Shown: positions 33,047-47,607 of the stretch, in pieces | Layout: every line of letters begins with the position of its first letter | Position numbering within the stretch: position 1 is the stretch's first letter | Assembly: GCA_037379345.1 (NCBI GenBank) | Contig: CM074514.1 | Location: 29,698,001-29,762,000 of the forward strand | From: Perna viridis | Lineage: Eukaryota | Reading direction: 5' to 3' | Length of the DNA stretch: 64,000 nucleotides | Translations under genes and position numbers: made by a program | Notes under the pieces: generated by a model | What the model saw: the letters and a program-made list of their open reading frames with translations, nothing else | Database searches by the model: none | Told to the model about the DNA's origin: nothing

Positions 33047-36000
33047 TTATTCTTTCAGTCTTAACAGCTGTCCTGAGGTTGTCTGTATACTGTAAAATAC
33101 ATAATATAAAGTTAGGCTGTATATGGTAAAGTACATATTACCACAAAATAAAGACATTAAATCCTGATAAGTAACAGTATGAAAGATTCCAAAAGGAGTT
33201 TCAGAATACCCTACCCACCAAATTCTTTACCACTAAACATTGTATACACTTAAGATTATTTGATCTTTTTCAATAAGAACTGTTAAAGTCAGAATATTTT
33301 TTTAAATCCCTACCTACATACACTTTTTTTTCAAAAGTGTAAACGGAAACACACAATTATATATTATTTTTTTGCCTTATATTTATGGAATTTTTATTGA
33401 AAATAGAATAGTCAGATACAGCTTTTCTACAACTAAATCAAGATTCCCTGAATGATGATGGTTCTAAATTTATAGAATCTCTTTCAGCTGGGATTTTTTG
33501 TCAATACCAAAGATAACAGGATATATGAATATTAGAACACTTTGAGTATAACTTGGGCAACATCTAAATTTCATATCAGTGTACTACTGAAAGTACTAGG
33601 CAACCATACAAATCCGTTATAATTGAATATCTTCAGTTTAAGAACATACCTGTGTATAAGATCAGCACCAATTATATCCTGGATGTGGTATGTAAGACCT
33701 AATCTACACATCTTAGGTAATTTCCTTTGTTCTAGATCCTTTAATTACAGAGAACATACTCATAATTTGTAATAATTAATATTTCCAATGGTATTACAGC
33801 TTACTACTATATTACATAGTATCTATGTACATGTATTGACATACAAATTGATGGCAAGCCCGTGTGAGCTGAGATGAACTGTTGTAAATTTTTGTAAGTA
33901 TTTTTTATTTAAAATCTGAATTAGTTCAAAATTGAATAAATTTGTAAAAGAATGCACTGTAACCATTAAAGCATATGGAGAAATCTAAAATATCCATAAT
34001 ATGCAATTTATTGCATTAATATCAGAGAATATTGTCCTGAGCAGATATTATTTTGCACAAGCTACCAATGCATGACGGACTGCTGGCCCTTAAAGTGATA
34101 TAGGTGTCTTGGGTTGATATGACATGCAATACAGACTTTTAAATGTAATATTTAGTACATAGCTCAGTAATTCTGCTTGAGAAAATTTAGAAAGTGTCAA
34201 TATTTGCCATGTACTAAGTATGAACCAAGTTTAATAAAGAATCATTACAATATGTTGATTTTAAAATGTACACAAGGAAATTACAGAATAAGAAATGGAC
34301 AGTAGCATTACAATATGTCTGTTGAACTTCCATTATTAAAAGATGCATAAGGTTTAAATTGTACTAATGGTCACTTGCCTAAAAAATACTTGAGACAAAT
34401 TTTAATTTTGATTTAAATATAATGAAACCTGTCTGAACCAAACCTTGAAAGTTTCAAAACCTGTCTAAACAAGACACTTTTAAAAGTTTCTTTCAGTTAA
34501 AATGTAATTTGAACCTTGGTACCAAAAATACCAGTCTGGTCTAAACCCAACCAATAAAGTCAAAAAGTGATTTGGTTTAGACAAGTTTCCCAGCAGGATC
34601 ATCCTCTATGTATTACTTACATTTTTAAGTATCTCTTTATACTTGCTCTTTTTAATCATTGTAAGTATGGCTTTCCTTCCTCTTACTAAACTTTTCATAA
34701 ACATGCCTGTATTAGGTACTGCTAACCAGAAACTTCCAACAGTTCTCACTGTTAAAACACAGGCTTTGACTAGTAGCCTAAAGTTGATGGAAAAAATGTT
34801 AAAACTATATCTAACTATTTACTTAAAATTCAATGTTAAAAATTTGTAATTAATAAAGGGGATGAAGCATCAGCGTTGTTCTATAAATAGAATCAGAAAC
34901 ACAAATGGTTCAAAATGGTTCTGTGGGAAACAGCGTACTGAATTTGATAGCGATTGTTTTAACTTTAAATGCTGGCGTAGGTCACCTACATGCAACAATG
35001 TCCTTAAAACAGAAATTTTCGTAAATTTAGAATTAATTAATTATTGCAATTTTAAAAAAATTTCTGCATAAGTAATGCTATTTTTTGCAATATCAAAAGC
35101 ATCACAATATATTTTTCATTCTACAGTATTAATGGGAAAAATATCACTCACAAGAAACTTGATTTTCCATTCTTTATCTTGAACTTGAAAAATATAGTCA
35201 AGTTGATTTAAAAAAAAATGGGTTTAAGTTTACTACAATTTTATTTCTACTCACGTAATATCATCATCTTTAAAGTTATACTCGTTAATGAGGGTATCCT
35301 GGTTAATGAACACATCAGAACATCTCTTCACTATATTATTTACAAATTTATCTGGAATAAAAAAATTCTTACACTGTATACTGCTATAAAATTATTTCCT
35401 CAACAAAGCATGTGTAAAAGGATTTCAAAATGAGACAGAATGATGTTTGTTTGGTCTTTACTCATAGAGTTATGTTTAGAGGTGATCCATAAATAACATA
35501 TCCACATCCACATGAACAATTAATAAGATAACCACATAGACACAGAAAACTTTTTTTCAACAGTCTTTATAGTTTAGCTTCTTATTGTTAAAGACACTTT
35601 TTCATGGAAACGCAAGTCACATGCTCGTAATTCTATTTCTTGATTGGCCAAATACTGATAACTTAGAGGCATTTGAAAAAAAACTGCCTTGAAAATTGAA
35701 ATATTGTTTCATGTTTTATTATTTTTTTTAATGAAATGTAGAAAATTATTAGTAAAAAGAACAAATTTTACTGTGTTAGAAATTCTTGTTTTAAAGATAG
35801 TACTGTTACTCGTTTTAAAGTGTGAGGCCCTATTGCCAACTCGAGATGTGTATTATTTGTTAAGCTGTTTACAGAAGTTGTTCCTACAGATGTACCTGCC
35901 ACAGTTTTAGGTATTGAGAATTCTGCCATTACTCTGGTTACATGGCACCGGTAATCTTCAGTATAAACCACAGCACATTCATCTAAGTCAGACCCTAGTT

Positions 36001-44900: not shown

Positions 44901-47607
44901 ATTTGTTTATATATTTATTGTACAGTCAATATATACAAATATATGACCAATTTTTCCTGAAAAGATACAACATTTAATTTTTAGGGAAGCCTATATTTAA
45001 TATTGTTTCAATTAGGCCATTCAGTAGTTATTTTTTGTTTCACAGGTCTTTCCATACCTCATAAATGTGAATCATTATTGTTACAAAGTTGCATTCAAAT
45101 GTCTTTCTTTTCTTATTTATGGTATTTAGATAGATTGTTTCTTTAAAACATTAATTTAAGTGTACATTAACATCAAGACTGTCTGTTTTCATCAGAACAT
45201 GTAAGGTAGTTTAATGAAATAGCTCTATGAAAAAGTATTTAACACTTGTGTATTCTCTGTTCAAGACTATTATCAAGATAAAGGGGAAAAAACAGGATAA
45301 AAATGGAAAATAGGATGTCCAAATATTAAAAATAAGCCAAATTTGGAAAAGCAAGTGAAAAAAAAAGAAAAAAAAAACATTTATTTAAAAAAAAAAATTT
45401 TGAACTTGCTCAATACCATATTTTTTTGTTCAGTTGGAGTGTGGGAATAAACATCTTGTCAACTATGAATTTTTTTTGTTTGTGTCTGTACCACAACAAA
45501 ATTCTTGAAAACAGTGTCATATATATTCTATACAATTATTGCAGAGCTGCCATAATTGTTCAAGTACATTCCACTGTAGATATTTTAAGAATTTCCCACT
45601 CAGCTTGTGAGCTACATGTACTCTTCATCTTGATTTTCTCCTCAGAATTTAATGAAAGTTGATATGACTGTTCCTTAGGCAAAAGCATTAGAAATTTTTA
45701 TCCAAAAAAACACATGGTTGCTTTACAAAAATAGAATGTTGCTAATCAAACCAGGTGAGCTGTTCAGGCTCTTTAGAGCCTATAGTTTACTAAGCTCTGA
45801 AGTTTATATGACAAGGGACGATACTTTATGATATAATGAAATTGTTTAACTATCTATGTTCCAAGAACCTTGAATTCTTGTTTTTTCCTACTAATAATTA
45901 ATGAAAAAATTTAATTTGGAAGGATAACTTTAAATCCCCTCTTTGCAAATCTGTTTCTGAATTACTTTTTTAACCTTTTTTTTTTTTTTGGTGTTATGAA
46001 AGAGATAACCCTTTGATGCCCTTTGTTCAAAGTGTTAATTGTCACACTGAAATGAATATGTTTACTTTACATTGTGTTGATAATTAAGAGTCGAAAACAT
46101 CATAACAAAGTATGAAAGATGCTTGACAAGGAATAAATGTTTGTAATGGGTTATTGATGTGAATTATATGATCAGATTTCCGTTAAAACCATCATCCATT
46201 GAAATAAGTAATGTTGAAATGACCTACTTTCATGAAACTTGGTATGGTGCATAGTTCTGATAACAAAACAAACAAGATCAGATTGATTACCAATGTTTTA
46301 TTGATGTTTCTAAGGTGGTATAATTTATTGAACAATCAGAAGTATCCTACACTTCCTAATGACAACAGACAGTCTTGATGGAGTCCTTTCCTGATATCAG
46401 TGCCTTAAAGCATGAATCTATCTAAATACCATGAATAGGAAAAGCAAGATAATGAAATGCATTGTGCATGAAATTGGTGCTAATGATTTTACTGTAACAG
46501 AAATCAAACCTATAGGATCAACAAGGAGATTTAATCTTGAAACATTGGCTTATGTAGATTATGTTTGGACAGTTTTTTTTTATACCAAGGCTAGTAATCT
46601 CTTAGTGATCCAATTATACACATCATTTAATATACATTGTCTCCTAACAGGGAAATGTAACCTCAGTTTGGTATACTTATTGCATTGATTTTATTATTCA
46701 GCTGACTGCATTACCTTGAATAGTGAAACCTATTAAACCAAACTTATTTTAAAAGTGTATTGTTAAGACAGGTGTGAGGTTTATCAATGTTAAAAATACA
46801 TTAAAATAGAAAAACCCACTCCTGAATACTTTGAAAAAACCTATCTGAACCCACCCTGATTACTCTGAAAACCTATCTGAATCTACCCTGAATAGTCTGA
46901 AAACCCATCTTAATTTACTTCTAAATGCTCTAAATGCCTGTCTTAACCCACTCCTGAATACTCTGAAAACCTATCTGAACCTACCCTGAATAGTCTGAAA
47001 ACTCATCTTAATCTACCCCCGGATGCTCTAAATGCCTGTCTTAACCCACTCCTGAATACTCTGAAAACCTGTCTGAACCCATCCTATTGCAGTTTGTTAC
47101 AATAGTACTTTGTGCTGAATTCGTTATAGGTGGGTTGAGACAGGTTTTCAGAGTATTCAGGGGTGTGTTTAGACAAGTTTTTAGGGTATCTAGGGTGGGT
47201 TTTGATAGGTTTTCAGAGTATTCAGGGCCGGTTTAGACAAGTTGTTAGGGTATCTAGGGTGGGTTTTGACAGGTTTTGAGAGTATTTAGGTGGGTTTAAA
47301 AGGTTTTCAGGATATTTAGTGTGGGTTTAGACAAGTTTGCAGAGTATTCAGGGATTGACATTGGTCATTGTCACAGCCTTTTCTTTAACTTAAAAGTTGT
47401 GCCATCTAAAGTGGTTAAATGTGTTTCAAAGTATGTTATATTTATAGAACAGTTTTCTTGATGGATTGGCGACCAGGAAATGATATACGGTTACAAAAAA
47501 TAGGTACCAGTTCTGAGCACCAGTTCCTGCCTGACTGGTACATTAACCCAAACACATCAGAGGTGGAAGGGAGCAGTGAGAAAAAACCAAAACTAGAAAC
47601 CAGATGA
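38977..47607 (+). CDS. DXO: DXO/Dom3Z/Rai1-family decapping and 5'-3' exoribonuclease, 7 exons, 403 aa
   Basis: Exons 38977-39356, 40716-40942, 42213-42308, 42771-42888, 43688-43823, 44799-44893, 47448-47607 (1212 nt, in frame). Motifs [82 protein letters not shown]. Confidence 0.95.
41280..41515 (+). mobile_element. Penelope-like element 3' module in DXO intron 2
   Basis: tctagaaaagcagaggatgcttaccctatcagtgcacc...ggagtccgagttgctcattt...gatttccgctagaatcttggt matches the other copies. Confidence 0.75.
43040..43250. repeat. MITE-like element with internal 31-bp tandem repeats
   Basis: agacaggttttcagattagtcagggttcagt repeated ~3.5 times; related to 34420-34590, 46810-47352 and 61845-61990. Confidence 0.6.
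46810..47352. repeat. Inverted pair of ~32-bp tandem arrays (fold-back) in DXO intron 6
   Basis: Left arm units aaaacctatctgaacc(c/t)accctgaatactctg (46810-47085); right arm is their reverse complement (47125-47352). Confidence 0.8.

What the first reader, a model, noticed from the sequence alone, without database searches (positions are those of the whole stretch)
33047..47607. STK19-DXO head-to-head pair in an invertebrate, as in the human MHC class III region
Seen: complete STK19 (minus) and DXO (plus) genes with ATGs at 38181 and 38977. Established: human DXO (DOM3Z) and STK19 (RP1) are adjacent and divergent within the NELFE-SKIV2L-DXO-STK19 cluster. Inference: the same orientation in a probable mollusc implies the pair predates the protostome-deuterostome split and has been kept despite heavy local TE turnover. 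It would be an ancient co-regulated module coupling clearance of lesion-stalled Pol II (STK19, transcription-coupled repair) with disposal of aberrantly capped transcripts (DXO). I cannot tell whether this has already been reported for molluscs.
Basis: partly seen in the sequence, partly recalled or inferred. Interest (0 to 1): 0.85.

Follow-up and report, generated by a model that had tools for sequence, protein, structure and literature searches.

The report
Ancient head-to-head STK19–DXO gene pair
A bivalve mollusc genome carries intact STK19 and DXO genes back to back, 795 bases apart, and the same arrangement in a chiton, a limpet, a tubeworm, amphioxus, an acorn worm and vertebrates shows the pairing is at least as old as bilaterian animals, a tidy but modest comparative-genomics result.

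Summary
The minus strand carries a complete 7-exon STK19 gene (259 aa, ATG 38181, stop 33047). The plus strand carries a complete 7-exon DXO gene (403 aa, ATG 38977, stop 47607). The two start codons are 795 bp apart. The host is a bivalve; its DXO is closest to Mytilus (69% identity).

I surveyed other genomes around DXO or STK19. The same divergent adjacency is present in another bivalve, a chiton, a limpet, an annelid, amphioxus and a hemichordate. Published work shows it in vertebrates. It is absent within 10 kb in a nemertean, a brachiopod, a sea urchin, a hydrozoan and a tick.

The inference that the pair predates the protostome–deuterostome split is therefore supported. It corrects a 2019 review stating there was no evidence of such linkage before vertebrates.

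The idea of a functional repair/RNA-surveillance module is untested. Repeated independent break-ups argue against an obligatory coupling. The most likely reason for retention is a compact shared promoter region. NELFE and SKIV2L are not linked here.

This is a new member of a known kind, the conserved ancient head-to-head gene pair. Interest is moderate.

The parts
38082..38181 (-). STK19 coding exon 1 (ATG at 38181; 33 codons + 1 nt)
   Evidence: N-terminus MSRKRTLMPEFYRKKK aligns with Patella and Liolophura STK19. GT donor.
37728..37879 (-). STK19 coding exon 2
   Evidence: Hits human STK19 residues 42-80 at E 1.5e-6. Pfam Stk19 21 bits. AG/GT splice sites.
35896..36037 (-). STK19 coding exon 3
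   Evidence: Hits human STK19 residues 81-114. tblastn with Patella STK19 residues 87-132.
35255..35351 (-). STK19 coding exon 4
   Evidence: tblastn with Patella and Liolophura STK19 residues 132-166 / 142-174. AG/GT splice sites.
34621..34777 (-). STK19 coding exon 5
   Evidence: Hits human STK19 residues 156-209 at E 2e-14. Pfam Stk19 38.5 bits, above the 27-bit cut-off.
33650..33738 (-). STK19 coding exon 6
   Evidence: Hits human STK19 residues 210-238 at E 2e-4.
33047..33089 (-). STK19 coding exon 7 with stop TAA at 33047-33049
   Evidence: IQTTSGQLLRLKE* aligns with the C-terminus of Patella and Liolophura STK19.
38182..38976 (.). 795-bp region between the two start codons; presumed shared (bidirectional) promoter region
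   Evidence: Sequence. The only local rise of CpG o/e (0.64-0.74 against 0.1-0.3 around it) is at 38600-39200. TSSs are not mapped.
38874..38929 (.). Inverted CCAAT boxes (ATTGG at 38874-38878 and 38906-38910) followed by an inverted ETS-type site ACTTCCTG (38922-38929), 48-103 nt upstream of the DXO ATG
   Evidence: The same order and orientation (ATTGG ... ACTTCCGG ... ATG) is seen in Tegillarca and amphioxus. Post-hoc shuffle P about 3e-8 for the ETS site. These are motif matches only.
38664..38689 (+). YY1-like AAGATGGC (38664-38671) and ETS-type CAGGAAGT (38682-38689)
   Evidence: Motif matches only.
38182..38200 (-). Pyrimidine tract + CAG directly upstream of the STK19 ATG (TTTTTTGCAG|GT ATG): likely 3' splice site of a 5'-UTR intron
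   Evidence: A similar signal lies 0-20 nt upstream of the STK19 ATG in all six linked species. This is an inference without RNA data.
38977..39356 (+). DXO coding exon 1 (ATG at 38977); GC donor inferred
   Evidence: Pfam RAI1 E 4.7e-16. 60% identity to Mytilus DXO. Phase check.
40716..40942 (+). DXO coding exon 2 (WRG and KFEQY motifs)
   Evidence: Pfam RAI1 E 5.5e-27. 89% identity to Mytilus. Aligns with DXO structure chain 10yz_A, residues 129-196 (numbering as in mouse DXO), including R132 and E192.
42213..42308 (+). DXO coding exon 3
   Evidence: tblastn 82% identity to Mytilus DXO residues 201-233.
42771..42888 (+). DXO coding exon 4 (GEVD and EFK catalytic motifs)
   Evidence: Pfam RAI1 E 4.3e-9. 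Peptide.
43688..43823 (+). DXO coding exon 5 (KWWAQS motif)
   Evidence: Pfam RAI1 E 2e-18. 83% identity to Mytilus.
44799..44893 (+). DXO coding exon 6
   Evidence: tblastn 78% identity to Mytilus DXO residues 319-350.
47448..47607 (+). DXO coding exon 7 with stop TGA at 47605-47607
   Evidence: tblastn to Mytilus DXO residues 350-395. Phase check.

Best explanation
The window holds the single-copy orthologues of STK19 and DXO of a bivalve. STK19 is the winged-helix transcription-coupled-repair factor. DXO is the decapping/5'-3' exoribonuclease of the RAI1 family. The two genes are transcribed divergently from a 795-bp region between their start codons.

This head-to-head arrangement is inherited, not assembled in this lineage. 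[quoted passage not shown] It has been retained in slowly rearranging lineages (bivalves, chiton, limpet, siboglinid annelid, amphioxus, hemichordate, vertebrates). It has been broken independently in several others.

The most likely reason for its persistence is cis-regulatory entanglement. Both genes are small, ubiquitously needed genes that appear to be served by one compact TATA-less promoter region next to the DXO start, carrying CCAAT and ETS-type sites. STK19 reaches that region through a non-coding first exon and a 5'-UTR intron. Any breakpoint between the genes would therefore strip one of them of its promoter.

Shown: gene integrity, orthology, and adjacency and orientation in seven lineages. 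Inferred: the ancestral state, the shared promoter, the 5'-UTR intron, and the reason for retention.
For: Gene models and integrity:
- Both gene models are intact.
- Family assignment rests on Pfam RAI1 and Stk19 and on PDB hits to DXO and STK19 only.
- The closest full-length proteins are annotated DXO and STK19 of molluscs.

Divergent adjacency elsewhere, with ATG-to-ATG distance:
- Tegillarca, about 3.0 kb.
- Branchiostoma belcheri, 762 bp.
- Saccoglossus, at most 4.6 kb.
- Liolophura, 2751 bp.
- Patella vulgata, 1503 bp.
- Lamellibrachia, at most 3.8 kb.
- Human, shark, zebrafish and coelacanth are head-to-head according to PMC6769589. Many vertebrates carry both genes on the same contig.

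Other support:
- STK19 intron positions match between the window and Patella.
- The promoter-like signature has a CpG o/e peak.
- ATTGG followed by ACTTCCKG lies upstream of the DXO ATG in the window, Tegillarca and amphioxus.
- A splice-acceptor-like signal lies just upstream of the STK19 ATG in all six linked species.
- Conserved 5'-5' pairs with short intergenic regions are a recognised class (Irimia et al. 2012, PMC3514665).
Against: - No transcript data: the TSSs, the 5'-UTR exon and co-expression in this animal are unknown.
- The motif observation is post hoc. It holds strictly in only 3 of 7 linked species.
- Intergenic distances of 1.5-3.8 kb in chiton, limpet, ark clam and tubeworm are longer than the classical <1 kb bidirectional promoter.
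- The pair was not found within 10 kb of DXO in Lineus, Lingula, Strongylocentrotus, Clytia and a tick.
- DXO and STK19 lie on different chromosomes in Littorina and Babylonia. Separation is therefore tolerated.
- No non-bilaterian with the linkage was found, so nothing older than Bilateria is shown.
- Only one ecdysozoan could be examined.
Confidence: 0.75

Rival explanations
1. The pair is kept because selection favours co-expression of two proteins that act in one pathway. STK19 clears lesion-stalled Pol II, and DXO disposes of the resulting aberrant or incompletely capped transcripts.
For: - Both proteins act on Pol II transcription quality control: STK19 in TC-NER (PMC11645862, 10.1101/2024.07.22.604575), and DXO as a decapping exonuclease (PMC6769589).
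- In mammals both genes are ubiquitously expressed, with the same peak tissues, adrenal and testis.
- The linkage is conserved for over half a billion years.
Against: - No physical or genetic interaction between the two proteins turned up in the papers read.
- The linkage was dissolved independently in several phyla that keep both genes: echinoderms, nemerteans and caenogastropods.
- Nothing in the sequence speaks to function-level coupling.
- Most conserved 5'-5' pairs are explained by shared cis-elements rather than shared pathways.
Confidence: 0.12
2. Neutral persistence. The genes are adjacent simply because the interval between them is a very small target for breakpoints, and the lineages that keep the pair rearrange slowly. 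No constraint acts on the pair.
For: - The interval is short, 0.76-3.8 kb.
- Retention is seen in taxa known for conservative genomes (my background knowledge of these taxa, not tested here), while losses are scattered.
- No other neighbouring gene is shared between the window and any of the other loci, which shows that the surroundings have been reshuffled freely.
Against: - That same reshuffling of everything around the pair, while the pair and its orientation survive in at least seven lineages, is what a constraint predicts.
- Genome-wide, only a few hundred pairs survive at this depth, and they are enriched for 5'-5' orientation (PMC3514665).
Confidence: 0.12
3. Coincidence or artefact. 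Either the adjacency arose independently in molluscs and chordates, or one of the genes is a pseudogene or an assembly chimera.
For: None found. The only irregularity is the GC donor of DXO exon 1.
Against: - Both reading frames are intact across 14 exons, with conserved intron positions.
- The same orientation recurs in independent assemblies of seven lineages.
- The chance that two given genes out of some 20,000 become immediate divergent neighbours twice is negligible.
Confidence: 0.01

Closest known systems
Human/vertebrate DXO (DOM3Z)-STK19 (RP1) head-to-head pair in the MHC class III region
   Same: Same two orthologous genes, same divergent 5'-5' orientation, very short interval. The window DXO model has seven coding exons and human DXO has seven exons, the first non-coding. 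STK19 probably has a non-coding first exon reaching towards or into the DXO 5' end.
   Different: There is no MHC context. NELFE, SKIV2L and C4-like genes are not detected in the 64-kb window, nor next to the pair in six invertebrate loci. Introns are much longer, so the locus spans 14.6 kb. The promoter is AT-rich and is not a CpG island.
Conserved ancient microsyntenic pairs (CAMPs) with bidirectional promoters, e.g. HSPD1-HSPE1 (Irimia et al. 2012, PMC3514665)
   Same: Unrelated genes kept adjacent in 5'-5' orientation across phyla, with a short intergenic region.
   Different: I could not check whether this pair is in that paper's list, because its supplements are not held. Co-expression is not measured here. 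The pair is lost more often than HSPD1-HSPE1.
NELFE-SKIV2L head-to-head pair (the other half of the 'NSDK quartet')
   Same: A housekeeping RNA-metabolism pair with a demonstrated 176-bp bidirectional promoter in human.
   Different: Different genes, not present in this window. The four genes become linked only in tetrapods according to PMC6769589.

Membership tests
DXO / Rai1 family (Pfam PF08652, PD-(D/E)XK decapping nuclease) | RAI1 domain detectable over the length of the protein | tested here: met
   Exon pieces cover profile positions 1-68, 75-147, 186-236 and 226-269, each above the 26.8-bit cut-off. The remaining exons align to Mytilus DXO.
DXO / Rai1 family (Pfam PF08652, PD-(D/E)XK decapping nuclease) | Catalytic and substrate-binding residues: Arg of the WRG motif, Glu of the KFEQY motif, Asp of GEVD, Glu and Lys of ExK | tested here: met
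   The R132 and E192 equivalents align with DXO structure chain 10yz_A, numbering as in mouse DXO. GEVD and EFK are present in exon 4 and KWWAQS in exon 5. The residue numbering of the last three motifs is from my memory of the mouse structure papers.
DXO / Rai1 family (Pfam PF08652, PD-(D/E)XK decapping nuclease) | Decapping / 5'-3' exonuclease activity | not testable with these tools
   Needs recombinant protein and capped or NAD-capped RNA substrates.
STK19 / WHR1 family (Pfam PF10494) | Sequence similarity to STK19 along the whole protein, collinear | tested here: met
   Five exon pieces hit human STK19 chains only, in order, over residues 42-238. Exon 4 and the C-terminus align to mollusc STK19. 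Pfam Stk19 gives 38.5 bits for exon 5 (above the cut-off) and 21.2 bits for exon 2 (below it).
STK19 / WHR1 family (Pfam PF10494) | Three tandem winged-helix domains | not tested
   This would need the joined protein for a fold prediction. The joined model was not built (see full report).
Conserved ancient head-to-head (5'-5') microsyntenic pair | Orthologues adjacent in several distant phyla with the orientation kept | tested here: met
   Seen in Mollusca (three classes), Annelida, Hemichordata and Cephalochordata, and in Vertebrata.
Conserved ancient head-to-head (5'-5') microsyntenic pair | Correlated expression of the two genes | not testable with these tools
   No expression data for this species.
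Bidirectional promoter (divergent TSSs less than 1 kb apart) | Less than 1 kb between the two transcription start sites | tested here: inconclusive
   The ATG-to-ATG distance is 795 bp in the window and 762 bp in amphioxus, so the TSSs must be closer than that if both lie between the ATGs. TSSs are not mapped. The distance is 1.5-3.8 kb in four other species.
MHC class III 'NSDK' quartet (NELFE-SKIV2L-DXO-STK19) | SKIV2L tail-to-tail with DXO, and NELFE next to SKIV2L | tested here: not met
   A Pfam scan of all 116 stop-free ORFs of at least 60 aa outside the pair found only 7tm_1, Ependymin and a weak tRNA_int_endo hit. No helicase or RRM was found. Short exons could be missed. Neighbours in six invertebrate loci are unrelated genes.

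The most novel reading that the evidence does not exclude
The STK19-DXO pair is a true functional unit of the Pol II quality-control system. One NF-Y/ETS-driven bidirectional promoter has been kept since the bilaterian ancestor. Its purpose is to set a fixed ratio of a repair factor that removes lesion-stalled Pol II and a nuclease that destroys the truncated or mis-capped transcripts left behind. Lineages that split the pair evolved compensating regulation.
Probability: 0.1. Interest if true: 0.7.

Novelty: new member of a known kind. Interest (0 to 1): 0.38.

Why it matters
It moves the origin of the DXO-STK19 linkage from 'vertebrates' back to at least the bilaterian ancestor. That corrects the statement in the specialist review PMC6769589 that there is no evidence for linkage of any two of these genes before vertebrates.

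It also shows that this half of the MHC class III 'RNA surveillance quartet' is an ancient unit that was later swept into the MHC, rather than something assembled there.

It adds a well-documented case to the catalogue of deeply conserved bidirectional pairs. It also offers a simple, testable promoter architecture (CCAAT + ETS) shared by bivalves and amphioxus.

It does not by itself reveal new biology of either protein.

Tried and rejected
- Whole-protein searches of the window's genes were not possible. The genes are spliced and the joined model was deliberately not built, so everything was done exon by exon.
- A homologue search with a 180-aa stop-free amphioxus stretch spanning two STK19 exons gave only two hits. 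One of them provided the full-length STK19 id used.
- The look-up of the Dermacentor DXO found no record.
- A PDB search with the 38-aa DXO exon 4 found nothing.
- tblastx of all eleven fetched loci against the window found no conserved neighbour beyond the pair. All outside hits were 21-31 bits.
- I looked for a PLD-like gene in the window, because chiton and tubeworm have one downstream of STK19. None was found.
- Literature searches for STK19 together with synteny, proto-MHC, microsynteny or amphioxus returned nothing.
- The supplements of Irimia et al. 2012 are not held.
- The species could not be named. The only 100% match is an unnamed 598-bp ENA contig.
- The weak tRNA_int_endo hit was not localised.
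- Rejected readings: pseudogenes, because the frames are intact; chance adjacency; membership of an MHC-like quartet.

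
Full report
**What is in the sequence**

The window is AT-rich (about 32% G+C) and has no N runs.

STK19 lies on the minus strand between 38181 and 33047. Seven stop-free pieces carry the protein in collinear order.
- Searched one by one against the PDB, the pieces hit only human STK19 chains, at residues 42-80, 81-114, 156-209 and 210-238.
- Two pieces hit Pfam Stk19.
- The remaining exons are exon 1, exon 4 and the C-terminal exon ending IQTTSGQLLRLKE*. 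They align to the STK19 proteins of the limpet Patella vulgata and the chiton Liolophura sinensis.
- With canonical GT-AG sites the coding exons are 38181-38082, 37879-37728, 36037-35896, 35351-35255, 34777-34621, 33738-33650 and 33089-33047.
- They sum to 780 nt, i.e. 259 aa plus a stop. No exon has an in-frame stop when read in its phase.

DXO lies on the plus strand.
- Four pieces hit Pfam RAI1 at E 4e-9 to 5e-27.
- tblastn with DXO proteins from other animals defines seven coding exons: 38977-39356, 40716-40942, 42213-42308, 42771-42888, 43688-43823, 44799-44893 and 47448-47607.
- They sum to 1212 nt, i.e. 403 aa plus a stop.
- All introns are GT-AG except the first. The first has to use a GC donor (AG|GCAAG) to keep the frame. 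This is the one uncertain junction.
- Exon 2 aligns best to mammalian DXO structures, ahead of fungal Rai1 and plant DXO1. It keeps the Arg of WRG and the Glu of KFEQY, which align with R132 and E192 of the DXO chain (numbering as in mouse).
- GEVD, EFK and KWWAQS are present in exons 4 and 5.

The two start codons are 795 bp apart.

As a result there is no full-length reciprocal search, gene tree or fold prediction for the window's two proteins. Orthology rests on three things: the exon-wise hits, the collinearity, and the fact that both families appear to be single-copy in most animals. No contig taken for human was fetched. Human STK19 and mammalian DXO appear only as PDB hits of window queries.

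**Whose genome**

An exhaustive search with DXO exon 2 and look-ups of the best hits point to bivalves. Among 277 fetched proteins, the best match over all seven exons is Mytilus galloprovincialis DXO at 69% identity. Other bivalves, gastropods and the chiton reach about 50-57%.

The host is therefore a bivalve, probably on the mytilid side but not Mytilus itself. The only 100% match is an unnamed 598-bp ENA contig.

**Is the adjacency conserved?**

I fetched the genomic surroundings of DXO or STK19 orthologues and checked them with tblastn.

Divergent (head-to-head) adjacency is present in:

| Species | Group | ATG-to-ATG distance |
|---|---|---|
| Tegillarca granosa | ark clam (bivalve) | about 3.0 kb |
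| Liolophura sinensis | chiton | 2751 bp |
| Patella vulgata | limpet | 1503 bp |
| Lamellibrachia satsuma | siboglinid annelid | at most 3.8 kb |
| Branchiostoma belcheri | amphioxus | 762 bp |
| Saccoglossus kowalevskii | hemichordate | at most 4.6 kb |

In Patella the annotated DXO gene range even overlaps STK19.

For vertebrates, the review PMC6769589 documents the head-to-head arrangement in human, shark, zebrafish and coelacanth. My two protein lists show DXO and STK19 on contigs of identical length in many fishes, amphibians and sharks. In Aldrovandia the two genes carry consecutive locus tags.

STK19 intron positions coincide between the window and Patella.

The pair was not found within 10 kb on either side of DXO in:
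- Lineus longissimus, although both genes are on one chromosome;
- Clytia hemisphaerica;
- Lingula anatina, where a PTR2 gene intervenes;
- Strongylocentrotus purpuratus, which has a tandem DXO duplicate instead;
- the tick Haemaphysalis longicornis.

In Lineus and Clytia no gene is called in the upstream 10 kb, so a more distant adjacency is not excluded. In Littorina, Babylonia and Amphiura the two proteins sit on contigs of different length, which means different chromosomes or scaffolds.

Nothing else is shared between the window and any of these loci. The conserved unit is the pair alone.

**What follows**

Identical divergent adjacency is seen in three classes of molluscs, an annelid, a hemichordate, a cephalochordate and vertebrates. 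It is most simply explained by presence in the protostome-deuterostome ancestor, followed by at least five or six independent separations. Independent origin is not credible for two specific genes.

Whether the linkage is older than Bilateria is open. The one cnidarian examined lacks it, and I could not reach others.

**How it probably works**

The interval between the start codons has no CpG island. However, the only local rise of CpG observed/expected (0.64-0.74 against 0.1-0.3 on either side) lies at 38600-39200, next to the DXO start.

Within 105 nt upstream of the DXO ATG there are two inverted CCAAT boxes (38874-38878 and 38906-38910) and an inverted ETS-type site, ACTTCCTG (38922-38929). 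Tegillarca and amphioxus show the same order and orientation: ATTGG, then ACTTCCGG, then the ATG 34-46 nt later. Shuffling gives P of about 3e-8 for the ETS site in 3 of 7 linked species. This test is post hoc and covers a motif I chose after seeing it. None of the five unlinked species has the site in the same 200 nt.

A further ETS-type site and a YY1-like site lie at 38664-38689.

Directly upstream of the STK19 ATG there is a pyrimidine tract and CAG (TTTTTTGCAG|GT ATG). All six linked species have such an acceptor-like signal 0-20 nt before the STK19 ATG. I infer that STK19 starts with a non-coding exon lying closer to DXO, much as the 5' ends of the human genes overlap.

The picture that fits best is a compact TATA-less promoter region serving both genes, so that a break between them would orphan one gene. 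This is inference. No transcript data were available.

**The functional-module idea**

STK19 is indeed a transcription-coupled repair factor that positions TFIIH and promotes clearance of stalled Pol II (PMC11645862; 10.1101/2024.07.22.604575). DXO is a decapping exonuclease. In mammals both genes peak in the same tissues.

But nothing found here or in the papers read links the two proteins mechanistically, and several phyla that keep both genes have separated them. I rate this reading at roughly one in eight to one in ten.

- NELFE and SKIV2L: a Pfam scan of all 116 stop-free ORFs of at least 60 aa outside the pair found only a GPCR, two ependymin-like exons and one weak tRNA-endonuclease hit. 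The invertebrate loci have unrelated neighbours. This agrees with PMC6769589 that the quartet formed within vertebrates.
- TE turnover: the introns contain dispersed repeats with 72-86% copies elsewhere in the window, plus a 33-bp satellite in two introns. These cover about 12% of the locus. Repeats are present, but 'heavy turnover' is not measured.

**Novelty**

Full-text searches combining STK19 with synteny, microsynteny, proto-MHC, invertebrate or amphioxus found no report of the invertebrate linkage.

The dedicated 2019 review states that there is no evidence for physical linkage of any two of these four genes prior to vertebrates. The present survey contradicts that statement.

The phenomenon itself, ancient 5'-5' pairs with short intergenic regions, is well described (PMC3514665). 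The pair may be buried in that paper's supplementary lists, which I could not read.

I therefore class it as a new member of a known kind, of moderate interest.

Noticed in passing
window 2560-3597 (-): A 346-aa stop-free ORF that is a single-exon rhodopsin-family GPCR (Pfam 7tm_1, E 1.9e-24).
   Followed up: partly
window 12544-12882 (+) and 20677-21012 (+): Two similar ORFs (…CCT(P)DQWEGRIFLDDSQIAF…) that hit Pfam Ependymin. They look like exons of two tandem ependymin-related genes about 8 kb apart.
   Followed up: partly
window, one ORF of at least 60 aa outside 33-47.7 kb (not localised): A weak Pfam tRNA_int_endo hit (E 0.0015 among 116 ORFs). It could be noise or an exon of a TSEN-like gene.
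   Followed up: no
window 43132-43246, 46813-47085, 47129-47353: A 33-bp (also 64/98-bp) satellite in DXO introns 4 and 6. The two blocks in intron 6 are in inverted orientation, forming a 500-bp palindrome-like structure.
   Followed up: partly
window 48301-48681 and 51258-52769: A 47-bp satellite just downstream of DXO, and a 1.5-kb minisatellite of 27/66/93-bp units with strong G-over-C skew. The minisatellite creates long spurious ORFs in all frames.
   Followed up: partly
window 41295-41527 (DXO intron 2), with copies at 27731-27939, 25479-25700 and 19282-19522: A dispersed repeat family of about 230 bp at 72-81% identity, in both orientations. Probably a SINE or MITE-like element.
   Followed up: no
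window 7160-8441 (-): Three overlapping long ORFs (179-222 aa) in different frames with no Pfam hit at E <= 0.01. They look like a decayed mobile-element gene.
   Followed up: no
L008 22231-24719 (-) and L010 19541-24482 (-): A PLDc_2 (phospholipase-D-like) gene lies downstream of STK19 in both the chiton and the tubeworm. This may be a second conserved linkage. It is not found in the window.
   Followed up: partly
L007 21719-24025 (+); Sinanodonta proteins P0001/P0151: The sea urchin has a second RAI1-family gene 7.7 kb downstream of DXO. The mussel Sinanodonta woodiana has two near-identical 278-aa DXO models on one chromosome. These are local DXO duplications.
   Followed up: no
L009 1314-25874 (-): In Patella vulgata the annotated DXO gene range runs across the whole STK19 gene on the opposite strand. 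This suggests a far-upstream DXO first exon and overlapping transcription units, reminiscent of the overlapping 5' ends in human.
   Followed up: no
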